IMG/VR virus record: IMGVR_UViG_3300031576_000002
Span: 124,001 to 188,000 of that record
Length of the DNA stretch: 64,000 nt
Direction: 5' to 3' (one strand)
A model generated the notes under the pieces. That model was not told the origin of the DNA, did not search any database, and saw only the letters and a program-made list of their open reading frames with translations. How positions within the stretch are numbered: the first letter of the stretch is position 1; the number at the start of each line of letters is the position of its first letter. Both the position numbers and the translations under genes were made by a program. This document shows positions 8,276-19,665 of this stretch, one piece after another.

Positions 8276-9048
8276 AGATCTCGAAGTTCCGCAGGAAATG
8301 CTGCTAAGAGCCCATCCCGAATACTGCTAACGGCAGCCCTTTCCCTGGTGCGCGTCTGAACTACCAAAGACTCAGTAGAACTGTCCTCTGCCACCACTAT
8401 AGGGGTTGGAACTTCATCTTGGTACAGACTGCTGTAATCGTGAAACTTGAAAGTCCCTCCGGAGAGTTTGTCTGATAGTTTTGTCCAGCCATTTCTTACC
8501 CCGTAAGCGTCCGCTACGATAAGCCCGTGAAGACTGGAGGATAATACTGCTTGAGAGCTTTGAATGTCCCGCAAGACTTGTAGAACAGGCTGGCATGGAT
8601 CGATCACATGCACGTCCGGATTCCGCCGCAAAAACTTACAAAGTTCATCATCATTCATGTCTACATAGTGAGGCAAGATAGAAAGTTCGTACTTCACGCA
8701 CTGATCCCATGAGGTTGGGATTAGGTTTGCCAAAAGCGCAGGATCTCCGAGGGCGCTCGGGGTGGCCTGCGGAATGCGGCAACGGGTAAGTAGTCCTCGC
8801 ACGGCTCGCACTTTTGCATCTGACAGGCTGATTGCGCTCTCCTCGAACATAGCCCCTGTTCCCCATACGAACTGGGAGTAGGAAACGGGGATCTCAGACA
8901 AAATGCTACCCACCGAAATCAAGTCGGCCTCTTCCATCGTGTGCGCACGCTCGACGACTACTCCCAGGACTTCCTGCAAGATGAAAGGTGTCAGCTCGTC
9001 CCCGAAGTTACCATGTCGGTAGCCGCAGGTGCGCCAGTAGGCTTTCAA
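8272..9048 (-). CDS. Polysaccharide pyruvyltransferase family protein
   Basis: NFGDEL, VGSIL, VWGTG, AVRGLLT, LGDPALL, ILPHY, SSSLHGLIVADAYG. Confidence 0.9.
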   Translation of the reverse strand: MKAYWRTCGYRHGNFGDELTPFILQEVLGVVVERAHTMEEADLISVGSILSEIPVSYSQFVWGTGAMFEESAISLSDAKVRAVRGLLTRCRIPQATPSALGDPALLANLIPTSWDQCVKYELSILPHYVDMNDDELCKFLRRNPDVHVIDPCQPVLQVLRDIQSSQAVLSSSLHGLIVADAYGVRNGWTKLSDKLSGGTFKFHDYSSLYQDEVPTPIVVAEDSSTESLVVQTRTRERAAVSSIRDGLLAAFPAELRDL

Positions 9049-10928
9049 AGGAGTTCCGACCAGCCTTCGCGCAAAGCTACATGGCGCAGCATTTCTTGAA
9101 GGCGATTCGTGTAGGTACAGTTAGCTTTCACGAATTCGTGCGCGGCGTCGCGAATTCGTAAGCGCTCGTCTTCATGAGCCAAGTAGTAGTCAATCTTGGC
9201 CTTGAGTTCATCCCATTGATTGTAGCGGTAAAAGACAATGGTCTTACCGTCTTCAAACTCTTCCTGCATGCCTTCAATAAAAGGGTGAATAATGAATCCG
9301 CCCCGCCCAAGAGTCTCGTAGACTCGGTCGCTCGTGTAGCGAGGATGATTGAATCCAGGACATAGTGTATCCCCCACTATGATCTTCACGCTCGCATACA
9401 GTGCATTCAGATCCTCGTTGCGCACAGCCGGCTGCCCAGGCTTGGGCCAGTACCGAAACTGTGGTCCGTACCAAGCTGTCAGGTTCTGCTTGATCTTCTG
9501 CCGATAGGGCAGCCACTCCGGATGGTAGTCGTCTAGCGCCCCGACAAAACCGACATCCGCTGTAAACCTACTGTCTGGGGCAGCCTTGTAACACTCTGGC
9601 TGGAAAACTCCAGCCCGCATGTGAATATGGTTGATACCTGCCAGCCTGAACTGATCCTCTGAACCTCCATCAGCCGTAAAGACGAATTTCGTATTCCAGA
9701 ATGGATCGCCCACGATCGAGTTCTGACGAGCAATTCCCCAGTACAAGTCAAGATGGTAAGAAGCCGTTGGCACGCCGACCGCGTGAAGATCACGGAAGAG
9801 CTTGTTTCCGTCTCCCGCAAAACCCCACGTCCGGGTGTAAAGCAGTAACCGTGTTCCAGTCTCTCGAACTCGCTGCCAGATCGTAGCCGCATCCACTTTG
9901 TTCTCTTGCAGCCGGTGGACGCGGTGCCCCAGCGTTTCAAGAGTCTGAGCTACATGATTTTCGGTCGAGTGCCGAGGCTCAAAATTGCCGATATAGGAAA
10001 TGTCCAACTGTTTTCCTCTTCGCGAACAAACGGCATCCATGAATGCAGCCGTTTCCGCCAGACTGCGCTCGGCTGTACTGAATCTCTGCTGGATCTTCTG
10101 CGCGGCCTCCTGCATGTTTTCCACCTGCTGATTACGACTTCCAGGTCGGCAGTGGGCTATATAAAGCGCTTTGGAGACAGGTTGAATGTCAGCACCGTCA
10201 AACTCTGCCTTTAGCCATAGTGCCCAGTCTTCCAGCGCGGCGTAGTCATCAAACCCGCCTAGCCGTAGGAATTGCTCACGCCGTATCATCGCGCCTATAA
10301 CGATGTAGTTACCGCTTAGAAGTGGACGCTTGCCTGCAATAAAGGGAGCGCCCTTCTTGTTATGTACTACCTTAACCAGAGACGGGTACCGCACATCTCC
10401 AGGTCCCGCAAGCATCTGCTGAATATACGCAGAATCAAGCTCATCGTCTGCGTCCAAAAAGATAAGCCACGCCGAAGTTGCTGCTTCTGCCCCTTTGTTA
10501 CGGGCAGTCTGAATGTTACTAGAATGCACACGGATGATCTCGTTCGGCTTGCGCGTCTGATTCTGCGCCGACAGTACCGCTCGCCCCGCTATCGCATTCC
10601 AGGTCGGCTCGTGCCCGTACGCGGCGATGATGACGGCAACTGTCTCTTCCGTAGGAGCATCCAAGCGCGTCACGGTCACGCGCGTCGCTTCAGGGGCGAC
10701 AGGTGGAACCGCTCCAGGCCGTACAGGCGGGATGAACGGCAGGCGGCCTTTAGGCGCTGACTTCGCCACACCTACGGCGATATTCTGAGCAGACTTCGCG
10801 GCTACATGCGCTTGGCGATCCGCTAGCAGTGCGCGGATCCTCGCGGCCTTGGCAGCGACCGCAGGAGATACGCCTCTACGAGTAGGAATGACAACGCCGC
10901 GCCGCGCCACGATTAGCTTTCTGCCCAT
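9045..10928 (-). CDS. GT2 domain fused to CgeB/Glyco_trans_1_2-type glycosyltransferase
   Basis: ARNKGA..WLIFLDADD, GGFDDYAALEDWALW; C-domain DVGFVG, RNEDLNALYASVKI, SDRVYETLGRGGF; basic Ala-rich N-terminal extension. Confidence 0.85.
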   Translation of the reverse strand: MGRKLIVARRGVVIPTRRGVSPAVAAKAARIRALLADRQAHVAAKSAQNIAVGVAKSAPKGRLPFIPPVRPGAVPPVAPEATRVTVTRLDAPTEETVAVIIAAYGHEPTWNAIAGRAVLSAQNQTRKPNEIIRVHSSNIQTARNKGAEAATSAWLIFLDADDELDSAYIQQMLAGPGDVRYPSLVKVVHNKKGAPFIAGKRPLLSGNYIVIGAMIRREQFLRLGGFDDYAALEDWALWLKAEFDGADIQPVSKALYIAHCRPGSRNQQVENMQEAAQKIQQRFSTAERSLAETAAFMDAVCSRRGKQLDISYIGNFEPRHSTENHVAQTLETLGHRVHRLQENKVDAATIWQRVRETGTRLLLYTRTWGFAGDGNKLFRDLHAVGVPTASYHLDLYWGIARQNSIVGDPFWNTKFVFTADGGSEDQFRLAGINHIHMRAGVFQPECYKAAPDSRFTADVGFVGALDDYHPEWLPYRQKIKQNLTAWYGPQFRYWPKPGQPAVRNEDLNALYASVKIIVGDTLCPGFNHPRYTSDRVYETLGRGGFIIHPFIEGMQEEFEDGKTIVFYRYNQWDELKAKIDYYLAHEDERLRIRDAAHEFVKANCTYTNRLQEMLRHVALREGWSELL

Positions 10929-11125
10929 CGCAGGTAGAGGTTATATTCGGCGCTAGTTCCGCTATAGATAGCGCGTTGCACGATCCGTGAAAGAATCACA
11001 TCCAGATCGTAGTGAGCGAGCAGATACTCTTCCGCCTCTTCCCGCGTTGAGAACGTCCCCACCCGCCGAAACAGCAGCTCGCTGAAGCGCTTCAACAGTG
11101 GCGCTGGACGGTAGCCCGCAGTCAT
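10913..11125 (-). CDS. Hypothetical protein
   Basis: 70-aa ORF with overlapping start/stop on both sides. Confidence 0.5.
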   Translation of the reverse strand: MTAGYRPAPLLKRFSELLFRRVGTFSTREEAEEYLLAHYDLDVILSRIVQRAIYSGTSAEYNLYLRWAES

Positions 11126-11358
11126 CGCTTTCGACGTTGGTTGATCGTATCGCGAAGGACATCGGCCACGTCCGCATGCTGCTCTTTGCGCGCCTTGATG
11201 CGCGGAGACCCACGTTCTCCCCGCTCTGGCAAGTTTGCAGGCTGGAAGTGATGCCCAACTGCTCTAGGCGTATTCCAGTTCTTGCACTCTTCCAGGATCG
11301 TGAGGCGGGCTACTTCGTTGACGGCCATGCCGAGATAGGTGAGATTCGTGCGGCTCAT
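11122..11358 (-). CDS. Hypothetical protein (start revised to ATG 11358)
   Basis: GAGG SD upstream of MSRTNL; the longer track ORF overlaps the Nudix remnant. Confidence 0.5.
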   Translation of the reverse strand: MSRTNLTYLGMAVNEVARLTILEECKNWNTPRAVGHHFQPANLPERGERGSPRIKARKEQHADVADVLRDTINQRRKR

Positions 11359-11371
11359 TTCCACTTTGACC

Positions 11372-11473
11372 TCAAAGCAAGTTGTTAACGGCGTAGGCGA
11401 CACCAGAATGGAGCGAACTGGGCAGGCTGTCAAGCTCAAACCACCCCCAGTCATCATTTTTCTTTTTCTGCAT
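11372..11473 (-). pseudogene. Displaced second copy of the Nudix gene 3' end (33-aa mini-ORF)
   Basis: MQKKKNDDWGWFELDSLPSSLHSGVAYAVNNLL vs Nudix C-terminus NSEWGWFSPEALPSPVHPNVKALL (N, WGWF, LPS, H, V shared); ATG overlaps the HNH stop (TGATG). Confidence 0.8.
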
Positions 11474-12033
11474 CAACCCGTCTGCTTCAATTTTAACGCT
11501 CTGTACCTAGCTCTTTGCCTTTGCTTAGCCTTTTCCCGAAATTCTGCACGGGTCTTGTACCATCGGTTTTTCTTATCTCTATCCCACTTTCTTACTTTTT
11601 CACGATACGCAGAATCTGTTAAAAACTTCTCTTTACGATCTGTACGAACTCTAGCGTTCCAGCAAGCAATGCAAGCTCTTCCGCCACTAACTGCGCGCAC
11701 ATTAGACCCTTCAAGCCTGTGCAAACCTTTCAAGCACATATTATTTAAGTGCGCTATAATAAAAGGATTCCTCCCTCGGTGACAATTTTCTCTCGGAGTT
11801 ACCGGCTCTAAGTGCTGCGGGTTTACGCATGCTGGAACTCGGCATAAATGGTCTATTTGAAGATTTACTGGAATCGGTCCCACCTGGACGGTGTAAGAGT
11901 AACGGTGTGCCCACACTGCTGTACCGTTTACAGAAGTTTTTCCGTAACCCTTTACATTAGTAGGACCTTTCCATAGCCAGCATCCGTCCGATTTCCGGAC
12001 CCTCGCCCAAAACCTTTCTTCCGATTCTGTCAT
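11473..12033 (-). CDS. Free-standing HNH homing endonuclease
   Basis: CWLWKG..GYG, AHRYSY..GPIP..IDHLCRVPACVNPQHLEPVTPREN; AT-richer than flanks. Confidence 0.92.
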   Translation of the reverse strand: MTESEERFWARVRKSDGCWLWKGPTNVKGYGKTSVNGTAVWAHRYSYTVQVGPIPVNLQIDHLCRVPACVNPQHLEPVTPRENCHRGRNPFIIAHLNNMCLKGLHRLEGSNVRAVSGGRACIACWNARVRTDRKEKFLTDSAYREKVRKWDRDKKNRWYKTRAEFREKAKQRQRARYRALKLKQTG

Positions 12034-12500
12034 AAGAGCGCTTTTACATTTGGGTGCACAGGAGATGGCAAAGCCTCTGGACTAAACCACCCCCACTCAG
12101 AATTTTCCCAGTTTAGTGCTACATTGCGCGACATCGCTTCCGCAGCGCCTTCTTCCACTTCGACCAGATAAGTAGTGTATGCGAAACCGCCGGAACGATA
12201 TACCGTCTCGCCCGCTCTATGCACTTCTGGCAGCCCGCCAAGCTCTTCCTCCGCTTCTGAAATTGCGCCTGCCCACTCGCTCTCACCAGGTTCTACTCTC
12301 CCGCCGGGAATGCCCCAGAGCCCTGGATCCATCACGTCTTGCGAGCGCTTCACGAGCAGGATTCTACCATCGCCTCGCCGGATCAAAAGTCCGGCTGCGC
12401 GCTTGCCCCACCGCACACGACCTTCCTCGTCACGAGAAAGCTCGCCGCCTTCATCGCGCGGAGCGCCCCACTTGCGTAGAATGGCGACTACTGGCGACAT
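12030..12500 (-). CDS. Nudix hydrolase
   Basis: Nudix box GGRVEPGESEWAGAISEAEEELG (RE replaced by SE); ILLVKRS..GLWGIPGG. Confidence 0.9.
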   Translation of the reverse strand: MSPVVAILRKWGAPRDEGGELSRDEEGRVRWGKRAAGLLIRRGDGRILLVKRSQDVMDPGLWGIPGGRVEPGESEWAGAISEAEEELGGLPEVHRAGETVYRSGGFAYTTYLVEVEEGAAEAMSRNVALNWENSEWGWFSPEALPSPVHPNVKALL

Positions 12501-13486
12501 GCCTGTCTCACCAAGAACCTGCCTGTCCGATCTCCAATCGTGAGCGTCTCTTCCTTGAATCCGTAGGACTTAGCCAAGTTTTTGTAGTAGATCGTGACTT
12601 TGTTTGCGTCCAGAGTAGGATCCCGCTGCCGCAGCGTCTCTTCCGTGTGGATCGCAACTCGATCAATTCCTTTCGATCTCGCCCACTGAAGCAGCGTCGC
12701 CATGCCTTCTTCAGCCCAGTCTGCAAAAAGTGAGAGCGCGTACCGCTTCATCTTGTCCAGCTCTTCGATCGTCAACCCTCTTCGCTCGAACTCGGCCTTG
12801 GTCGCTCCGAACCGCCACGGCTCCACCTTCTCCAGCACTTGCTCTCGGACCTTCACGTTCTCAATGCTCTCGACGAATTCCTCGTACGTCTCGTGCGTCA
12901 AGATCGTCTTGGCCTGATCGAACGCTGTGAATACGTCGCCCTGGATTTCGTCTACCAGGAGAAGATCGTTACTGACCTTGTCCAGCCGGATCCAGCCAAC
13001 AGTCTTCTCTCTAACCGGATGCTTGGAGTAATGGCTACCCTTGTAGATCACGTCAAGGAATTCCTCGAACTCTTCGTACTTGGCGACTAGCTCATCAAGA
13101 TGCGCGGAACGATTGATCTGCATGACGATCTGCTTCGCATCCCGGTAGCTAGTCTCGGGATCGTGATACTTGCCGTAGGATACTTCGTACCTTCCCGGCT
13201 CCAGGTGCTCTAGGTAGGCTTCAATATCTTCGCGCTTCACAACAGGCTGGTTTTTTCTCAGATCTGTGAGCTGCTGTGTATACCTCTGCGAGATGCTCTG
13301 GAACTTGCGCTGGAACTCCCGCCAAGGAAGTTGGTCGAGGTTTTCCCGCTCGTACACTCCAAGAACGTAGCGCAGAGAATCTTCCAGCCGGGAGAGCGTC
13401 TGCTGGGGAACGTCTTGGCCCCGGCGCTTGAGCCTAGTTGGAGTGCTCCCGCCTAAGCATTGAATGGCTTTACGCAATCGTTCCAT
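12488..13486 (-). CDS. Hypothetical protein with GNAT-like DEIQ(S/G)D module (start revised to ATG 13486)
   Basis: HPVREKTVGWIRLD..LVDEIQGD..LLQWARSKGIDRVAI..YYKNL..YGF; homologous to two modules of the 1156-aa ORF. Confidence 0.7.
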   Translation of the reverse strand: MERLRKAIQCLGGSTPTRLKRRGQDVPQQTLSRLEDSLRYVLGVYERENLDQLPWREFQRKFQSISQRYTQQLTDLRKNQPVVKREDIEAYLEHLEPGRYEVSYGKYHDPETSYRDAKQIVMQINRSAHLDELVAKYEEFEEFLDVIYKGSHYSKHPVREKTVGWIRLDKVSNDLLLVDEIQGDVFTAFDQAKTILTHETYEEFVESIENVKVREQVLEKVEPWRFGATKAEFERRGLTIEELDKMKRYALSLFADWAEEGMATLLQWARSKGIDRVAIHTEETLRQRDPTLDANKVTIYYKNLAKSYGFKEETLTIGDRTGRFLVRQACRQ

Positions 13487-13487
13487 A

Positions 13488-13823
13488 TCAGTAAACCGTA
13501 TCTCTTTCTGCGCGGCGGTATTGCGATTCCCAAGAAGTCGCCCAGATGTCGTACACATTCCTGTGACAGTGCGGATGGATCCAGGCGTACTGCAAAGTTT
13601 TTGTGTGCGGCTTTCTACAGATCAAGCAGTTAACGACTTTGGGGAAAGCACGAGGTTTCAGGGGTTTCTTGAAATTCCGCGCAATGCTCTGCGCGACCTT
13701 ACGAGCAGCTCTCTTGCGGCACGTCCTCGTACAACGCTTAACGGCAAAGCCTGCCTTGAACTTCTTCCCGCACATATCGCACACCTTCGTGTAGAGCGGG
13801 CGCTTCTTTTTCATCGGCGTCAC
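13488..13823 (-). CDS. Basic Cys-rich zinc-finger-like protein
   Basis: CDMCGKKF..CTRTC and CLIC..HPHC. Confidence 0.6.
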   Translation of the reverse strand: MTPMKKKRPLYTKVCDMCGKKFKAGFAVKRCTRTCRKRAARKVAQSIARNFKKPLKPRAFPKVVNCLICRKPHTKTLQYAWIHPHCHRNVYDIWATSWESQYRRAERDTVY

Positions 13824-13906
13824 TTTAGAGCGCGCAGCAGCGGACTGTCAGAACCGTCTTTGGCCTTTAGCGCGTAGTCTGGGTCGCAGTAAAAGGAGTA
13901 GTTCAC
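13820..13906 (-). pseudogene. Displaced second copy of the glycoside hydrolase 3' end (28-aa mini-ORF)
   Basis: (V)NYSFYCDPDYALKAKDGSDSPLLRALK vs GH C-terminus GYGLVGGADGDSQLLAELR; GTG overlaps the HNH stop and TGA overlaps the next start. Confidence 0.6.
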
Positions 13907-14493
13907 TTCTCCGAGAGTTTAAGCAGTCTACGCTTTTTCTTGTTTTTAACGGCAATAAATAGCTTATTATTTTCATAGTAGAGCTTAGAGGCGGCTCTTG
14001 CCTTTTCCCGGTAGACAGGGTCTTTAGCGTACCTCTCGCACTTTCTCGCGGCACTAGCCTGCAACCAGGCGTCCGTGCTTTTCTCGATCCGATCGCGCTC
14101 TGTACGACAGGCAATACAGGTCCTACGGCCTTGGTACCAGTATACGTTAGCACCTTCTAGCGCGTGCATACCTTTTTTACAGATATTGGTACGGTGTACA
14201 ATAGCCGAGGGGGCTTTCCCGCGCCCTATATTCTCTGCCTGTGTACACACCTGAAGATGATCTGGATTCACGCAGTCCCTCCGACCACAAACCATGTGAT
14301 CTATTACTAAGCCCGGTGGAATAGGCCCCATGAACATTTCCCACGCTACTCGATGCGCTCCAACCGGCCTGCCATTCTTAGAAAACTTTCCGTAACCTAA
14401 AGCCTTAGACCCGCTCCACAGAAGACAGCCTTCTTCGGACTCCTGGATATAACTCAAGAAGCGTTCTGCAAAGTTAGTAAGCCGTGGAGCCAT
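13903..14493 (-). CDS. Free-standing HNH homing endonuclease
   Basis: GCLLWSG..GYGKF, AHRVAW..GPIP..IDHMVCGRRDCVNPDHLQVCTQAEN. Confidence 0.92.
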   Translation of the reverse strand: MAPRLTNFAERFLSYIQESEEGCLLWSGSKALGYGKFSKNGRPVGAHRVAWEMFMGPIPPGLVIDHMVCGRRDCVNPDHLQVCTQAENIGRGKAPSAIVHRTNICKKGMHALEGANVYWYQGRRTCIACRTERDRIEKSTDAWLQASAARKCERYAKDPVYREKARAASKLYYENNKLFIAVKNKKKRRLLKLSEK

Positions 14494-14515
14494 TTATACC
14501 GTCCGGAGCAGCCGA

Positions 14516-15391
14516 TTAGGGCGCCCTACTCGTAGCTCTAAGCTCAGCTAAAAGTTGAGAATCACCGTCTGCTCCGCCTACAAGTCCGTAGCCGTTTTCT
14601 TCACGCCAGGCATACCACGTCCACAAATCCACTTTCACGCCCAGCCGTGCCCACACGGCGGGCGTCTGCCGGAAGTAGTCGAGATGCTCGTTGCGCTTCG
14701 GACGGCCAAATTCGGTCACCCAGACTTGTTTGCCCTTCTTCCACACATCGTCCACCAGCTCGGCAACCGCAGGCACCCTTTCCCATGAGTCCCCGTACAC
14801 ATGCAGCCCGAACACATCTACCAGGTCAAGACCTCCTCTTTTCACAAACTCTTCATTCAGCCGTAACTTTCCTTCATAGGTCGGTGGAAGCGTTGCCGCA
14901 GAAACGAGTAGTTTCCCCGGCGAGCGCCTGCGTATCTCAGGAGAGATCACACGCAACCAGTCTAGGTACTCCCCAAGTGACCAGCATAAAAATCCTGCCG
15001 CACAGTTGTCTACTTCGTTTTCAAGTTCCCACCCTATCACCCGGCTGTCGTCGCGAAATTTGTCCACCAGTGTAAGATCTGTAGAGGATGTAAGGATCAA
15101 CAAGAATCTGGCATTCAGTGGAGAGTTTTTTACCAGTCTTTCTACGAAACTCTCTGTATCTTTTGGAACTTGCATGCGAATCATCGAAGCGACTGCCATG
15201 ATAGCTGGAACATCTTCTGGTAGGGCTCCACTAGGGTGCAGGTGAATCCCCCGCTGCTTGTAGCTCAGCAGCGGCTGCTCGTCCGGGGGCACGAGAATAT
15301 CCGCAAGCTCAGCACAAGAAGCTGTCAGCGCAAGCGCGGTCAACAGAGATAGGAAGCGCTGCAAGGATCGGCCTTTCGGGTAAGTTGACAT
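14516..15391 (-). CDS. Clan GH-A glycoside hydrolase, predicted lipoprotein
   Basis: Lipobox-like LALTASC; acid/base WELENEV; FGLHVY; nucleophile VWVTEFG. Confidence 0.82.
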   Translation of the reverse strand: MSTYPKGRSLQRFLSLLTALALTASCAELADILVPPDEQPLLSYKQRGIHLHPSGALPEDVPAIMAVASMIRMQVPKDTESFVERLVKNSPLNARFLLILTSSTDLTLVDKFRDDSRVIGWELENEVDNCAAGFLCWSLGEYLDWLRVISPEIRRRSPGKLLVSAATLPPTYEGKLRLNEEFVKRGGLDLVDVFGLHVYGDSWERVPAVAELVDDVWKKGKQVWVTEFGRPKRNEHLDYFRQTPAVWARLGVKVDLWTWYAWREENGYGLVGGADGDSQLLAELRATSRAP

Positions 15392-15403
15392 TTTCAGGAT
15401 TCT

Positions 15404-15411
15404 TACTATAC
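15404..15411 (-). promoter_or_regulatory. GTATAGTA -10-like box
   Basis: Upstream of the GH gene; one of at least 8 copies. Confidence 0.6.
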
Positions 15412-15532
15412 TACTCTCGTGGAACTAGATCCAGAAGTTCTCCAGGAGATCGCTGAGCGCGCTGCTCGAATCTCTAGTCGTGCTCGGTCCATCAATGCCC
15501 GTCTCACTCAGGTAAACGCCAAGGTGGAGGCG

Positions 15533-15721
15533 CTAGCCCTCAAAGCCTCGGTACGTCGTGATAACCTTGAGCACCTCCTCGACGTTCGAGACTCGAAGGT
15601 CGATCCGCTCAAGGTCCGCGTCTAGCGTCCTCAAGACGCTCAAGACGTTGCTCAAGTCGTCCTCACTTACCGGCGCATCTACGGCAGTCAGCAGGCTCAG
15701 GACTGCTTGGATCTCTTTCAT
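15533..15721 (-). CDS. Small coiled-coil hypothetical protein
   Basis: 62-aa heptad-like ORF coupled (ATGA) to the upstream stop. Confidence 0.5.
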   Translation of the reverse strand: MKEIQAVLSLLTAVDAPVSEDDLSNVLSVLRTLDADLERIDLRVSNVEEVLKVITTYRGFEG

Positions 15722-16186
15722 CGTCGCTCCCAGCCGGGCCGATACACTACGTTGATCTGGCTCGCTTCAATCTTGCCAATGTAGATTGCAGAGTAGGCTC
15801 CGGTTTCATCATCAATGGCAGAGTTCCAAGATACTCCCGCCGCCTTTACCTGTTCAAGTATCTGCTCCCCGTTAAGGATTAAAAAATCTCGAATATCGTA
15901 TTGGGGCTCCTCTTCCCCAAAGACCTTCTCCCAGAGCGCAGAACCGCCCACGTTAAAATCTGGAATAAGCCGAGTAGCGTCTACTTCAACTTCAAGTACG
16001 GCAGCGTCCTTACCCCCCCGCACTAGAATACGCTCTAGCCCAGTGTTCGGCAGCATCCGGGTCGTCTACAAGAAACGGGTAGTACAGTCCTTTTTCTAGT
16101 TTCTCGTCGAGGAACTCTTCTCTGACGCCGTGATAGAGCGTAACCGTTCCGGCCAGGAGCTTGATGGATTGGCGGAGAGCACTCAT
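15718..16186 (-). pseudogene. ADP-ribosyltransferase-like gene split by a +1 frameshift at a G7 run
   Basis: VTLYHG..L..GL..PFLVDDPDAAEHWA..AGG(stop) continues as KDAAVLEVEVDATRLIPD in the +1 frame; run at 16013-16019. Confidence 0.55.
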
Positions 16187-16194
16187 ACACTGGC

Positions 16195-19100
16195 TCACCA
16201 GATCCGGGTTTCTATCCCGCTCGGCACGACCAAGAATGCGCGGAAGGGAGGACGCCCAATGCGGGCAGCCAAACGAGAAATCTTACTAGCAATCTTCTTC
16301 TGCCAGATACGGTACGTGTGCTCTTGCTCCTCTTCGTCACCACGCGGAACGAACGAAATCTCTCCCGGCTGGAATCCCATCTGCTGCGGCAGCTTCTCGT
16401 AGTAGCGCCGCACCTTTCTACTCTTTGGCATTCCACCCTCGGAGAGAAGGCCGCCGCGCGTAATGCGCAAAGTATCGTCCGTAGCAAGGTAGAGCATCTT
16501 GACGCCCTTCTCCCTTGCGGCCTCAGCAACGGCTTGAATGAGTGCGTACTCCCACTGCCCCAGCACTTTCTCGATCTGAGGCTTGACCTTGCGGTACATC
16601 GCACTAGGATCGGCTACATCTTGCCCCTTCTCCCAAAGTGTAGGCCAGCCTTTCGGCAAGTCCCTTGAATCATCTGCGACACCGGCTAGCACCTCGTCGA
16701 GCTTCAAAAACTGCTCGTACACATCCGACTGAATCTCGTCCACAAACCATTCCGTATCCGAGAGTGGGTCTATTCTCGCCCAGCCGATCGTCTCTTGACT
16801 CCGCACGGGATGACCCGCGTAAGTGCCCTCTTTCAGCAGGTACTCCATGACTTTCCGAGCAGGTGGCGTCATGCCCTCCAACATCTCTTCTGTCATGTCC
16901 AGGCGGAGAACGGTCTGCCTGACGTTCCTAGATCGCTGGAGTCCGGTCCAGCCCTTGTAAGAAACATCGAACGTATTGCCGGAGCTATCCAGGTAGGCTT
17001 GGATCGACTGCGTGGTGACGTTGTTGCCTTTGACAATACGATCTTTGAAAGACCAGTTCTCAATCCATGGATAGCGCTTCTTGATCTCCCGGAATGGAAT
17101 CGCACCGCCTGCCACTTCTACCTCTTTGAGAAGGGTGCGGAGGAATTCTTTTCCGGGGACGTACTCCACTTTTGAAGATGCTGCACCTGCACCGCCTATG
17201 GTCGCGGGCAGGAATGGATGCTTGCTCCTTAAACTGTTGTACTCCTCTTCTATGTGCTCTACGACATCGTCGAGTCCTGGCGCCAAAGCTGCGGATGAGT
17301 CCAAGATAGCGTGAGCCGCTGTAAGCAGCGGCGGAAGCGTGTCAAAGTGCTCGCATAGACTGCGCAGCTTCTCGTATTTCACGGGGAGTACATCGCCCAA
17401 TTCCTCGTCTAGCTGTTCCAGCAGTGATTCGACAGCAAAATCATGAGCCAACCCTCTGAGCCAGTCGCCCTGGCTGTCGCGTATGAACTTTTCTAGGTCC
17501 TCGTCACTGGCATAGTCGCCAATAAAAGCCGGCCATTCATTGCTGAATTCCTTGACCCAGTCAACATTGTAGCCTTTCGATAACCACTCCATCGTGCTGA
17601 CAACGCCGTAATTAGCGATCTCCTCCTGAAGCGACTCTCCTTCTAAAAAGTTAGCCTTCGCAGAAGGATCCAGTTTACCAAAAACTTTTTCTACGTCATC
17701 GGCGCTCACACGATTCTTAGCGAAGAGGTACTCGTAGAATCCCTCTAGCGCTCTTGCGTCTTCGGCCAGACTGTTATTTTCCGCGTACGTCTTATAGTCA
17801 GACTCGTCCATGTCTTCTACACGGCTCCGCACTTCCTGTTCAAAGTTGTCCTCTACAAGATCCTCGCTCGGATCCTCCATTCTGTACTTGCCCGGCTCTT
17901 CTTGGCAGAAAAGATCATAAAGATAGTCGTGGACTTCCGCGACAAAAGCTTGCTGGCGACGAGTCTCTTCCTGCTGCAAGCGCTCCTGCTCCGCAGGATT
18001 AAGCGGAATCAGTTCCAGTTGCCGCGAATCCGTCGGTATAAGGGGCTCGTACACAGGCGGCTGAAGATCTTCCTGCCCAAGAATGCCAAGCGCTGTCTTC
18101 AAGCGACTGGCGCCTTTACGGGCGCCCAAATCTTTCACCCACAAGTCCGCGTACACTTCCCCGTACAATTTGATCGGGTCTTCAATTTTCTTGAAGCCCT
18201 CTTCTGCGGGCAGCTTCTCGTAGAAGCGCTCCAGCGTCTCGTCTGATGCGCCGCCCCACCGATTCGCCTGGATCTCTGCATTCGTCCAGATCAGATAGCG
18301 AATGTTGTTACGCCGTGCAGCATCCTCCAAGTAATCAATAACCATATCGGTCCAGTCGGAGAATCGGTTAATCAGCGCATTTACAATCCGGTGGACTTTC
18401 TGCTTGCTCAGTTTGTAATCCACCGCCAACTTGCCAATCACTTCTTTATCGAGGTAGCGGTAGATGCTGCGCATGAAATCGCTTTGAATGTTCTCCACCA
18501 CCCACGCCTTGCCAGATTCCCCCACGCTCGGAACAGCAATCCACTCGGGTTCACCATCGATGCGGATGTAGGCAATGGCTTCGCCGTAGTGACCTGGCAA
18601 ACTTTGGCCGTACAGCTTTCGCGCCAGCACCCATCCCGGTTCGCCCGCAATCTGTTTTCCGTCTGCGACAACTGCATTCCAGATTTCATCGGTAGGGTAG
18701 AACGCAAACGTATAGGGCACGTCTGATATTGTAGCGCCCTTGTACTCCTTCTCGCCGCGCTCGACATGAAATGTCATCGGATCTAGGCGCGCTACCGCTT
18801 CCTGAAGCTCGGCTACGGTCGCCTCTGTTCCAATCCGTGCGATAATGTCGCGCCGGATGTAACCCGGCACGTTGCGGAGCAAAGCCTCGATGTCACTCTG
18901 GATGAGCTGTTCATCGGGAGTCCGGCCCTCAAGCTGCTTCTCTACTTCTTGCACACTACGCGGAAGGTGGTCGGCGCTACCGGCATGGTCAATGTCTATT
19001 TCTTCAATTCTTGCTTCTTCTGCCTCATCGCGCTTCTCTTGCGCGATCTCCATGAAACGCTCAAGAGTGGGAATGCCGCGGTTGGAGTAGCCTTGCGCCA

Positions 19101-19665
19101 AATTCATTACCACCCCAGCATCTGCACTGACTATCCAATTATGTTGACTATTAGCTAGAAACTCCTCTCCTAGTGCGTACATGGGATCAGCGTCCGGCCA
19201 GTCTACCCCGTTCCACCATTCCTCTTTCCACGCCCGCAAGCTATCAAATAGCAGGACGTCGATTTTCGCCTGATCCAGACTGGGCAGCACAACCTTCAAA
19301 GCTGCTTCAAGTTCATCGCCGTCAAACTTACTGCTTACGGGGTCTGCCTCTTCAAGAGCATTCCCCGCTTCCTCGCCATGATCTTTTCGGACAATGTCTA
19401 CCGCTGACGACCAAATATCTTTCCCGCCGTCAATGCTTGGACGGTCCTCATCATTCCAATACTCCCATACGTCAAACTCGACATCGGTGCGTCCTACGAC
19501 TACATCAGGAACAAGGTAACGTCCGTAGCGAGCGTCCGCCCCATGGTCCAAGTTCCAGATCGCCTCGTGGGGGAAGAGTTCCTCGATCGCTGCTACAACG
19601 TCTTCGCTACGAATCCCAGGCATTGGACCCTCGACGCAAAAAATCGGACACGGCATCTGCCGCAT
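16195..19665 (-). CDS. Large acidic multidomain (polyvalent-like) protein with two GNAT-like DEIQSD modules
   Basis: 1156 aa; YIRIDG..VVENIQSD..AARRNNIRYL..FYEKLP..GF and WARID..VDEIQSD..AAREKGVKMLYL..YYEKLP..GF. Confidence 0.8.
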   Translation of the reverse strand: MRQMPCPIFCVEGPMPGIRSEDVVAAIEELFPHEAIWNLDHGADARYGRYLVPDVVVGRTDVEFDVWEYWNDEDRPSIDGGKDIWSSAVDIVRKDHGEEAGNALEEADPVSSKFDGDELEAALKVVLPSLDQAKIDVLLFDSLRAWKEEWWNGVDWPDADPMYALGEEFLANSQHNWIVSADAGVVMNLAQGYSNRGIPTLERFMEIAQEKRDEAEEARIEEIDIDHAGSADHLPRSVQEVEKQLEGRTPDEQLIQSDIEALLRNVPGYIRRDIIARIGTEATVAELQEAVARLDPMTFHVERGEKEYKGATISDVPYTFAFYPTDEIWNAVVADGKQIAGEPGWVLARKLYGQSLPGHYGEAIAYIRIDGEPEWIAVPSVGESGKAWVVENIQSDFMRSIYRYLDKEVIGKLAVDYKLSKQKVHRIVNALINRFSDWTDMVIDYLEDAARRNNIRYLIWTNAEIQANRWGGASDETLERFYEKLPAEEGFKKIEDPIKLYGEVYADLWVKDLGARKGASRLKTALGILGQEDLQPPVYEPLIPTDSRQLELIPLNPAEQERLQQEETRRQQAFVAEVHDYLYDLFCQEEPGKYRMEDPSEDLVEDNFEQEVRSRVEDMDESDYKTYAENNSLAEDARALEGFYEYLFAKNRVSADDVEKVFGKLDPSAKANFLEGESLQEEIANYGVVSTMEWLSKGYNVDWVKEFSNEWPAFIGDYASDEDLEKFIRDSQGDWLRGLAHDFAVESLLEQLDEELGDVLPVKYEKLRSLCEHFDTLPPLLTAAHAILDSSAALAPGLDDVVEHIEEEYNSLRSKHPFLPATIGGAGAASSKVEYVPGKEFLRTLLKEVEVAGGAIPFREIKKRYPWIENWSFKDRIVKGNNVTTQSIQAYLDSSGNTFDVSYKGWTGLQRSRNVRQTVLRLDMTEEMLEGMTPPARKVMEYLLKEGTYAGHPVRSQETIGWARIDPLSDTEWFVDEIQSDVYEQFLKLDEVLAGVADDSRDLPKGWPTLWEKGQDVADPSAMYRKVKPQIEKVLGQWEYALIQAVAEAAREKGVKMLYLATDDTLRITRGGLLSEGGMPKSRKVRRYYEKLPQQMGFQPGEISFVPRGDEEEQEHTYRIWQKKIASKISRLAARIGRPPFRAFLVVPSGIETRIW

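What the first reader, a model, noticed from the sequence alone, without database searches (positions are those of the whole stretch)
13820..14620. Second case: HNH after the glycoside hydrolase is followed by a remnant GH C-terminus
Seen: the 28-codon ORF 13906-13820 (..DYALKAKDGSDSPLLRALK) resembles the GH end (..GYGLVGGADGDSQLLAELR). It bridges the HNH stop to the next gene's start by GTGA overlaps. The current GH 3' codons are A/T-ending like the HNH, whereas the remnant's are more G/C-ending like the genome. Two independent cases within 3 kb suggest a recurring mechanism (inference).
Basis: partly seen in the sequence, partly recalled or inferred. Interest (0 to 1): 0.7.

Follow-up and report, generated by a model that had tools for sequence, protein, structure and literature searches.

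The report
Homing endonuclease displaced a gene end
In this 205-kb cave-metagenome phage, a selfish HNH endonuclease gene sits just after a glycoside hydrolase gene and is followed by an orphaned second copy of that gene's last ~20-30 codons, an arrangement already known from fungal mitochondria and noted beside phage homing endonucleases, so it is a clean but ordinary example.

Summary
On the minus strand lie a complete glycoside hydrolase gene (14516-15391), an intact HNH_3 endonuclease gene (13903-14493) and a short open frame (13820-13918).

- **Profile test.** The short frame's last 19 residues match the C-terminus of the hydrolase family. A family profile built without this phage's own gene ranks it as the best non-self hit among all 6613 six-frame ORFs of the genome. 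It aligns to profile positions 266-284 of 287, and 0 of 20,000 shuffles reach its score.
- **Pairwise similarity.** The match to the phage's own hydrolase end is weak.
- **Second case.** The same architecture lies 2.4 kb away (NUDIX gene, paralogous HNH, NUDIX-end remnant) and is highly significant.
- **Rivals excluded.** No intron model matches, and both upstream genes already carry complete family-like ends. This rules out an intron, an intein or a split gene.

Best explanation: a free-standing homing endonuclease entered with a replacement 3' end, and the earlier end was stranded downstream. The direction (current end foreign, remnant native) has only weak codon-usage support. No HNH-less allele could be found.

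The architecture matches the mobile-ORF C-terminal replacements of Allomyces and Glomus mitochondria. Gene fragments beside phage homing endonucleases have also been reported. This is a new member of a known kind, of modest interest.

The parts
14516..15391 (-). Glycoside hydrolase gene (291 aa), a clan GH-A type (beta/alpha)8 barrel with the WELENE and VWVTEFG motifs; complete, including strand beta8 and helix alpha8
   Evidence: ORF list. Weak Pfam Glyco_hydro_cc hit. 36 homologs besides the gene's own database entry, with E as low as 1e-52, aligned. AlphaFold2 model with pLDDT 91. Foldseek matches to GH39, GH30, GH5, GH2 and GH79 barrels.
14519..14605 (-). Current 3' end of the GH gene (last 29 codons, REENGYGLVGG...RATSRAP); candidate replacement segment that arrived with the HNH gene
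   Evidence: Family-like C-terminus: 8.9 bits for the last 32 residues against the host-free profile. GC3 0.34 and codon adaptation 0.67, against 0.58 and 0.71 for the gene body. The change-point test is not significant.
14494..14515 (-). 22-nt spacer between the GH stop codon and the HNH1 start codon
   Evidence: Sequence.
13903..14493 (-). HNH1: intact free-standing HNH_3 endonuclease gene (196 aa) with an IDH...CVNP...AEN motif and a C-terminal Cys-rich region
   Evidence: Pfam HNH_3 9e-15. phrog_826 HNH endonuclease 3e-42. 446 homologs, the closest non-self one about 45% identical. More than 1000 phage records hold relatives.
13820..13918 (-). Orphan GH C-terminus (remnant). The frame is open over 13823-13918; the ORF from the GTG is 13820-13906; the profile-supported part is 13823-13879 (DYALKAKDGSDSPLLRALK); the stop codon is 13820-13822
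   Evidence: Translation. Host-free GH profile: 7.4 bits, HMM positions 266-284 of 287, best non-self ORF of 6613, 0 of 20,000 shuffles reach it. GC3 0.68 and codon adaptation 0.78.
13488..13814 (-). Next gene (108 aa from the ATG at 13814; a GTG at 13823 overlaps the remnant's stop). Cys-rich small protein with a weak match to the zinc-finger part of an HNH endonuclease family
   Evidence: phrog_1271 E 2e-4. No similarity to HNH1.
12030..12500 (-). NUDIX hydrolase gene (156 aa), complete; the parallel case
   Evidence: Pfam NUDIX 8e-18. Homologs 52-59% identical.
11473..12033 (-). HNH2: paralogous HNH_3 endonuclease gene (186 aa). Its start overlaps the NUDIX stop (ATGA)
   Evidence: Pfam HNH_3 1e-10. 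phrog_826 4e-40. 42% identical to HNH1. GC3 0.41, below all 117 long ORFs of the genome.
11372..11461 (-). Orphan NUDIX C-terminus (KNDDWGWFELDSLPSSLHSGVAYAVNNLL*), starting 12 nt after the HNH2 stop
   Evidence: Pairwise score 69, 0 of 5000 shuffles reach it. Host-free NUDIX profile: 19.2 bits, genome-wide E 2.9e-4, HMM positions 119-145 of 147. NDDWGWF equals the family consensus.
11122..11358 (-). Gene downstream of the NUDIX remnant (78 aa; its ATG lies 13 nt after the remnant's stop)

Best explanation
**What it is.** The locus is a gene hybrid made by a free-standing homing endonuclease gene. It has four parts, in order on the minus strand:

- the glycoside hydrolase core;
- a functional C-terminal segment;
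- the HNH_3 endonuclease gene;
- an orphaned second copy of the hydrolase's last ~20-30 codons, still butted against the next gene.

**Most likely history (inferred).**

1. An HNH-less ancestor had the hydrolase ending in the remnant sequence (...DYALKAKDGSDSPLLRALK*), directly followed by the next gene.
2. The endonuclease cut or nicked within the conserved beta8-alpha8 coding region.
3. Repair copied from a donor in which the endonuclease gene followed a diverged homolog of the hydrolase.
4. The left crossover fell inside the hydrolase gene.
5. The right junction formed at or near the break, just past the endonuclease stop codon.
6. The result is that the donor's 3' end plus the endonuclease gene were inserted, and the resident 3' end was stranded downstream.

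**Consequences (inferred).** The diverged replacement end keeps the hydrolase intact and probably makes the locus immune to re-cutting. The remnant could serve as the right-hand homology arm in later homing events. The same process happened at the NUDIX gene with a paralogous endonuclease.

**Shown versus inferred.** Shown here: the architecture, the homology of both remnants to their gene families, intact endonuclease motifs, and the absence of an intron model match. Inferred: the cleavage site, the donor, the order of events and the immunity.
For: - **Architecture and coordinates**.
- **The remnant is a genuine family C-terminus.** With a host-free GH profile it is rank 2 of 6613 ORFs, aligns to HMM positions 266-284 of 287, and 0 of 20,000 shuffles reach its score.
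- **The upstream GH is complete.** It has beta8 (residues 256-259) and alpha8 (279-287) in a pLDDT 91 model and folds like clan GH-A hydrolases.
- **HNH1 and HNH2 are intact HNH_3 / phrog_826 endonucleases**, 42% identical to each other.
- **The identical architecture at NUDIX is highly significant**. It ranks 4th of 936 in a genome-wide scan, above every reverse-strand control.
- **The two copies share no DNA similarity in the GH case**. This argues for import of a diverged end rather than a local duplication.
- **Codon usage agrees in both cases.** Current ends have GC3 0.33 and 0.40 with codon adaptation 0.62-0.63, like the HNH genes. Remnants have GC3 0.68 and 0.62 with codon adaptation 0.78, like the genome. 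Pooled Fisher p is 0.012.
- **Both remnants keep a tight junction with the next gene**, 5 and 13 nt before its ATG.
- **The same architecture with a proven foreign inserted C-terminus is documented** for mobile endonuclease ORFs in Allomyces and Glomus mitochondria (PMC3630166). Fragments of neighbouring genes beside phage homing endonucleases are reported (PMC10055350).
Against: - Only 19 residues of the GH remnant are confidently aligned, and the genome-wide E-value is 0.93.
- Pairwise similarity to the phage's own GH end is weak.
- Codon evidence for the GH case alone is not significant: Fisher p 0.12 and change-point p 0.36. GC3 also varies widely within the GH gene, from 0.27 to 0.87 per 15 codons.
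- No HNH-less allele, donor or close relative was found in any collection. Insertion point, direction and mobility are therefore untested.
- Three sampled loci of HNH1 homologs elsewhere show no gene-end duplication.
- The third HNH_3 gene of this genome did not surface among the top scores of the genome-wide tail scan.
Confidence: 0.72

Rival explanations
1. The architecture is real but the polarity is the opposite, or it arose locally. Either the current GH end is native and the HNH gene arrived together with a foreign GH-end fragment picked up in an earlier host, or a local tandem duplication of the 3' end came first and the endonuclease gene landed between the copies.
For: The GC3 change-point on GH+HNH1 is not significant, and GC3 inside the GH gene is very uneven. 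Both copies score about equally against the family profile, at 8.9 and 7.4 bits. In the NUDIX case, 19 of 23 bases are shared at the WGWF codons. That could be a vestige of a local duplication.
Against: In both cases the remnant has the genome-like codon usage and the current end the HNH-like one (pooled p 0.012). There is no DNA similarity between the two GH copies. Both remnants keep a tight junction to the downstream gene, as expected of the resident end. In the mitochondrial precedents, the copy downstream of the endonuclease is the native one.
Confidence: 0.16
2. The GH 'remnant' is a chance resemblance in a short spacer ORF between the HNH gene and the next gene. Only the NUDIX case would then be real.
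For: The pairwise score of 27 is reached by 1-10% of shuffles. The pair ranks 708 of 936 in the genome-wide pairwise scan. The profile E-value is 0.93 over the genome, and only 19 residues align.
Against: The ORF was specified before the test, yet it is the single best non-self hit of 6613. It aligns to the very end of the profile and terminates there. 0 of 20,000 shuffles reach its score. It sits in exactly the position predicted from the independent, highly significant NUDIX case.
Confidence: 0.09
3. The HNH gene lies in a self-splicing intron or an intein, or splits the gene into two functional pieces. The downstream ORF would then be the true last exon or a needed second polypeptide.
For: HNH_3 endonucleases are often intron-encoded in phages, and homing endonuclease insertions can split genes that stay functional (established knowledge; PMC3045599 was listed).
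Against: No Rfam family, including the group I and II intron models, matches 10500-16500 even at E up to 1. The GH and NUDIX ORFs upstream already contain complete, family-like C-termini before their stop codons. The HNH genes are separate ORFs with their own start and stop codons.
Confidence: 0.03

Closest known systems
Mobile-ORF (homing endonuclease) mediated C-terminal replacement in fungal mitochondrial genes: atp6 of Allomyces macrogynus; atp6, atp9, cox2 and nad3 of Glomus sp. (PMC3630166, read). C-terminal duplications of atp6 and cob beside endonuclease ORFs in Endoconidiophora (PMC6279837)
   Same: The order of parts is the same: gene core, inserted C-terminus, endonuclease ORF, native C-terminus left downstream. 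The two C-terminal copies are diverged. The event recurs at several genes of one genome.
   Different: Here the host is a 205-kb dsDNA phage, not a mitochondrion. The endonuclease is HNH_3 rather than LAGLIDADG or GIY-YIG. It is a separate ORF, not in phase with the host gene. The targets are accessory genes (a glycoside hydrolase and a NUDIX hydrolase). The foreign origin of the inserted end is not demonstrated, because no relatives are available.
Free-standing homing endonucleases of phages and their 'HEG-islands' (Barth et al., PMC10055350); T4 Mob-class HNH endonucleases (PMC2790892 and PMC2988022, listed; details from my own knowledge)
   Same: An N-terminal HNH_3 domain is followed by a Cys-rich C-terminal part. 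The genes are intergenic and sit directly after a conserved gene. Small ORFs that are fragments of neighbouring genes lie beside them, and these have been suggested to act as recombination substrates.
   Different: The published fragments retain nucleotide homology to full-length essential genes. Here the GH copies share no DNA similarity, and the targets are not essential replication or structural genes. Cleavage and homing are untested here.
T4 mobA / gene 60 cassette and Aeh1 mobE-split nrdA (my own knowledge; PMC3045599 listed)
   Same: A homing endonuclease gene invades a coding sequence, and the cassette carries sequence that keeps the host function and alters the target site.
   Different: Those cases leave a gene in two functional pieces, or need translational bypassing. 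Here the upstream gene is complete, and the downstream piece looks like a redundant leftover.

Membership tests
Free-standing HNH_3 homing endonuclease gene | HNH_3 (His-Me finger) nuclease domain with intact catalytic motif | tested here: met
   Pfam HNH_3 9e-15 for HNH1 and 1e-10 for HNH2. phrog_826 at e-42 and e-40. The IDH...CVNP...EN residues are conserved in both.
Free-standing HNH_3 homing endonuclease gene | Own ORF outside any intron or intein, next to a conserved target gene | tested here: met
   Separate start and stop codons. No intron model match. Homologs elsewhere sit directly after DNA methylase or DNA polymerase genes.
Free-standing HNH_3 homing endonuclease gene | Presence/absence polymorphism among related genomes | not testable with these tools
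   No relative of this phage was found in the phage, viral, metagenome or protein collections. The contigs of the source sample show one form only.
Free-standing HNH_3 homing endonuclease gene | Site-specific cleavage of the endonuclease-less allele and resistance of the endonuclease-bearing allele | not testable with these tools
   This needs an enzyme assay.
Endonuclease-mediated C-terminal replacement (Allomyces/Glomus-type gene hybrid) | Complete gene, then endonuclease ORF, then a truncated second copy of that gene's C-terminus on the same strand | tested here: met
   GH case. NUDIX case.
Endonuclease-mediated C-terminal replacement (Allomyces/Glomus-type gene hybrid) | The copy upstream of the endonuclease is foreign and the downstream copy is native | tested here: inconclusive
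   GC3 and codon adaptation point this way in both cases (pooled p 0.012). The single cases are not significant, and the GH change-point test fails. No relatives are available for a phylogenetic test.
Endonuclease-mediated C-terminal replacement (Allomyces/Glomus-type gene hybrid) | Only the upstream copy is expressed as part of the gene | not testable with these tools
   No RNA run holds this sequence.
Group I/II intron carrying an HNH ORF | Intron RNA structure flanking the ORF, and an upstream exon lacking the gene's end | tested here: not met
   No Rfam match at E up to 1 in 10500-16500. The upstream ORFs have complete family-like ends.
Clan GH-A glycoside hydrolase (the host gene) | (beta/alpha)8 barrel with catalytic Glu after strand 4 (NE motif) and strand 7 (TE motif) | tested here: met
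   N125, E126 and E227 are invariant or nearly invariant in the family alignment. The model has pLDDT 91. Foldseek probability is 1.00 to GH39, GH30, GH5, GH2 and GH79. The Pfam hit is below its cut-off, so no specific GH family is assigned.

The most novel reading that the evidence does not exclude
These HNH_3 elements may be specialised 'gene-end replacement' cassettes. Such a cassette would be a third way, besides introns and inteins, for a homing endonuclease to live inside a phage coding sequence. Two further points would follow. First, the orphan ends would be kept open and chained by start/stop overlaps (ATGA, GTGA, TTGA). Second, this would make them both the right-hand homology arm for further homing and a relay for translational coupling to the downstream gene.
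Probability: 0.15. Interest if true: 0.55.

Novelty: new member of a known kind. Interest (0 to 1): 0.35.

Why it matters
- **Same solution in two systems.** The finding shows that the mitochondrial solution to invading a coding sequence also operates in a large environmental phage, twice within 3 kb. That solution is to bring a substitute gene end and strand the old one.
- **Annotation.** Short ORFs after phage endonuclease genes may be displaced gene ends. The last codons of the upstream gene may be foreign, which can mislead phylogenies and recombination analyses.
- **Target site.** The start of each remnant marks a candidate endonuclease target: the beta8-alpha8 region of the hydrolase and the invariant LNWEN/WGWF motif of the NUDIX protein. 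This could guide specificity assays.
- **Scope.** The finding does not open a new question.

Tried and rejected
**Searches for an HNH-less allele or a close relative. All were negative.**
- blastn of 11000-16200 against phage records.
- Related loci of the GH, NUDIX and orf356 proteins in viral contigs.
- Word-indexed search with the GH protein: only its own database entry.
- Exhaustive HMMER search: the nearest GH homolog is 40-42% identical and sits in unrelated contexts without any HNH gene.
- A degenerate DNA pattern for DYALKAKDG in viral and metagenome contigs: only the phage's own contig and six chance hits.
- Contigs of the two cave-metagenome runs: one form only. Contigs drop rare variants, so this does not show absence.

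**Other tests.**
- Intron hypothesis: no Rfam match.
- GC3 change-point as a way to place the left junction: not significant for the GH case and imprecise for the NUDIX case.
- Generality across the HNH clade: three homolog loci with an adjacent upstream gene show no tail duplication.
- A possible third case was rejected as not significant. The tail sheath gene end (...NFAFVASFE) resembles the ends of two tandem HNH genes downstream (...EFAATAASFE), but the score of 21 is reached by 1053 of 5000 shuffles.
- PDB sequence search with HNH1 found nothing.
- The zinc-rich gene downstream of the remnant is not similar to HNH1.
Full report
**Setting.** The window is bases 124001-188000 of a 205,227-base virus record with 56% G+C. 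The record was assembled from a cave metagenome. Near the finding every gene lies on the minus strand. The order is:

- a glycoside hydrolase (GH) gene, 14516-15391;
- a 22-nt spacer;
- an HNH gene (HNH1), 13903-14493;
- a short open frame, 13820-13918;
- a small Cys-rich gene starting at the ATG at 13814.

**Check of the observation.**

- The 28-codon ORF 13906-13820 is there. Its frame is open from 13918.
- Its GTG overlaps the HNH1 stop codon, and its TGA overlaps a GTG of the next ORF.
- Pairwise similarity to the phage's own GH end is weak. The local score is 27. It is reached by 53 of 5000 shuffles against the last 45 residues, and by 484 of 5000 against the whole protein.
- A genome-wide scan compared each long ORF's tail with its downstream 1.5 kb. 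The GH pair ranks only 708 of 936 there.

- The GH has no close relatives.
- An exhaustive HMMER search found 36 homologs down to E 1e-52. I aligned 17 of them with the GH.
- Their C-termini share the pattern W.WYAW.D..LGY.L...dG...SPLL..L. The remnant (DYALKAKDGSDSPLLRALK) fits this pattern better than it fits the phage's current end.
- I built a profile from the 17 homologs without the phage's own gene. I searched it, with filters off, against all 6613 stop-to-stop six-frame ORFs of the genome.
- The GH comes first and the remnant ORF second, at 7.4 bits (E 0.93 genome-wide, 1.4e-4 as a single pre-specified test).
- The remnant aligns to profile positions 266-284 of 287 and ends at its stop codon.
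- The authentic last 32 residues of the GH score 8.9 bits. None of 20,000 shuffles of the remnant exceeds 5.2 bits.

The remnant is therefore a family-like GH C-terminus, in the right place and with the right register. I count the observation as confirmed.

**The host gene.**

- An AlphaFold2 model built with the alignment has mean pLDDT 91. It is a (beta/alpha)8 barrel.
- Foldseek matches GH39, GH30, GH5, GH2, GH79 and other clan GH-A enzymes at probability 1.00.
- The NE and TE catalytic motifs are conserved.
- Strand beta8 is residues 256-259 and helix alpha8 is residues 279-287. The upstream gene is thus complete.
- The remnant duplicates the loop and alpha8, and possibly beta8.

**The endonuclease.**

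- HNH1 is an intact HNH_3 protein: Pfam 9e-15 and phrog_826 3e-42.
- It has hundreds of relatives at 50% identity or less. More than 1000 phage records hold a relative.
- It is 42% identical to HNH2 (11473-12033), including the catalytic IDH...CVNP...EN residues and a Cys-rich segment.

**The parallel case.**

- HNH2 follows a NUDIX gene (12030-12500) with an ATGA overlap.
- Twelve nucleotides after the HNH2 stop begins a second NUDIX end, KNDDWGWFELDSLPSSLHSGVAYAVNNLL*, at 11372-11461. The next gene's ATG follows 13 nt later.
- Against the current NUDIX end the remnant scores 69, and 0 of 5000 shuffles reach it.
- A host-free NUDIX profile gives 19.2 bits, genome-wide E 2.9e-4, at positions 119-145 of 147.
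- In the genome-wide tail scan the case ranks 4th of 936 and exceeds every reverse-strand control.
- The remnant begins inside the invariant LNWEN/WGWF motif. Its NDDWGWF equals the family consensus.

The architecture therefore recurs with a paralogous endonuclease.

**What it is not.**

- An Rfam search of 10500-16500 at E up to 1 finds nothing, so there is no recognisable group I or II intron.
- Both upstream genes carry complete family-like ends before their stop codons. The HNH genes are separate ORFs.
- An intron, an intein or a genes-in-pieces arrangement is therefore not supported.

**Direction of the event.**

- In both cases the current end has few G/C-ending codons. GC3 is 0.33 for the last 21 GH codons and 0.40 for the last 25 NUDIX codons. 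Codon adaptation to the genome's long ORFs is 0.62-0.63.
- This resembles the HNH genes (GC3 0.52 and 0.41).
- The remnants have GC3 0.68 and 0.62 and codon adaptation 0.78, like the genome (mean GC3 0.63).
- The contrast is not significant for either case alone (p 0.12 and 0.09). It is significant pooled (p 0.012).
- A single change-point test on GC3 is not significant for GH+HNH1 (p 0.36). For NUDIX+HNH2 (p 0.043) it places the change anywhere between codons 67 and 125.
- The two GH copies share no DNA similarity. The two NUDIX copies share 19 of 23 bases at the WGWF codons and nothing beyond.

I read this as modest support for 'current end imported with the endonuclease, remnant native'. 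It is not proof.

**Mechanism.** The best-supported explanation has four steps, all inferred:

1. The resident gene was cut in its conserved 3' region.
2. Repair copied from a donor that had the endonuclease gene after a diverged homolog.
3. One crossover fell inside the gene.
4. The other junction formed at or near the break, just past the endonuclease stop codon.

This inserts 'replacement end plus endonuclease gene' and strands the resident end against the downstream gene. Whether they matter for translational coupling is unknown.

**Comparison with what is known.**

- Exactly this order of parts is described for mobile endonuclease ORFs in fungal mitochondria: gene core, inserted foreign C-terminus, mobile endonuclease ORF, native C-terminus.
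- The mitochondrial examples are atp6 of Allomyces macrogynus, and atp6, atp9, cox2 and nad3 of a Glomus species. There, close relatives prove that the downstream copy is the native one (PMC3630166). C-terminal duplications of atp6 and cob lie beside endonuclease ORFs in Endoconidiophora (PMC6279837).
- For phages, Barth and colleagues note that small genes in 'HEG-islands' can be fragments of neighbouring essential genes. They suggest these act as recombination substrates (PMC10055350).
- The present locus is thus a new member of a known kind. It involves an HNH_3 endonuclease, accessory hydrolase genes and a large environmental phage.
- It is not a general property of this HNH clade. Three homolog loci with an adjacent upstream gene show no tail duplication. 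The third HNH_3 gene of this genome did not surface among the top scores of the genome-wide tail scan.

**Limits.**

- No relative of this phage and no HNH-less allele was found in any collection.
- The contigs of the two runs from the source sample show one form only.
- The insertion point, the donor, mobility and cleavage specificity therefore remain untested.

**Verdict.** The novelty is low to moderate. Interest 0.35.

Noticed in passing
It is much stronger statistically than the GH case. The start of the remnant marks a candidate endonuclease target.
   Followed up: yes
L008 2738-6318 (genome 84738-88318, outside the window): A tail sheath gene (543 aa) is followed by two tandem paralogous HTH/NUMOD3/HNH genes (305 and 321 aa), then a 147-aa ORF of unknown family. 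Both HNH proteins end in ...AVEFAAT(A)ASFE-like residues, resembling the sheath end ...NFAFVASFE. This might be an in-frame variant of the same phenomenon, but the similarity is not significant.
   Followed up: partly
L009 2911-4140 (genome 102911-104140, outside the window): There are two tandem paralogous ~200-aa genes with CxxC...DHI.GGGN...C.NCNAGK motifs (His-Me finger-like). Each has a Lys/Arg-rich N-terminal half. This is a whole-gene duplication, not a gene-end remnant.
   Followed up: partly
L007 3540-4379 (genome 16540-17379, outside the window): A third HNH_3 gene lies between a GT2 and a GT4/GT1 glycosyltransferase gene. The protein has a degenerate extra HNH_3-like half at its N-terminus. 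The downstream glycosyltransferase matches only the end of the GT4 N-domain profile, so it may be truncated at its 5' end. The gene pair did not surface among the top scores of the genome-wide tail scan.
   Followed up: partly
window 12488-13558 and 16195-19665: The 356-aa protein between the two HNH cassettes and the 1156-aa protein upstream share a ~280-residue C-terminal domain (BLASTP E 4e-13; motif GW.R.D...VDEIQ.DV). The domain has no Pfam or PHROG match, and neither protein has relatives in viral contigs.
   Followed up: partly
window 13488-13814: The gene just after the GH remnant is a small protein with two CxxC pairs. It has a weak match (E 2e-4) to the zinc-finger part of another HNH endonuclease family (phrog_1271). 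It might be a leftover of an older endonuclease gene. It has no similarity to HNH1.
   Followed up: partly
window 9045-10928 and 14516-15391; L007 2702-5152: The phage carries several glycosyltransferase genes (a GT2 plus Glyco_trans_1_2 fusion, a GT2, and a GT4/GT1). Its GH family also has a lipoprotein-like signal sequence (Cys near residue 26 in most homologs). This suggests a glycan-modifying gene set.
   Followed up: no
L009 4312-4680 (genome 104312-104680): A 122-aa ORF contains an acidic MEES(T/M)EES repeat tract.
   Followed up: no
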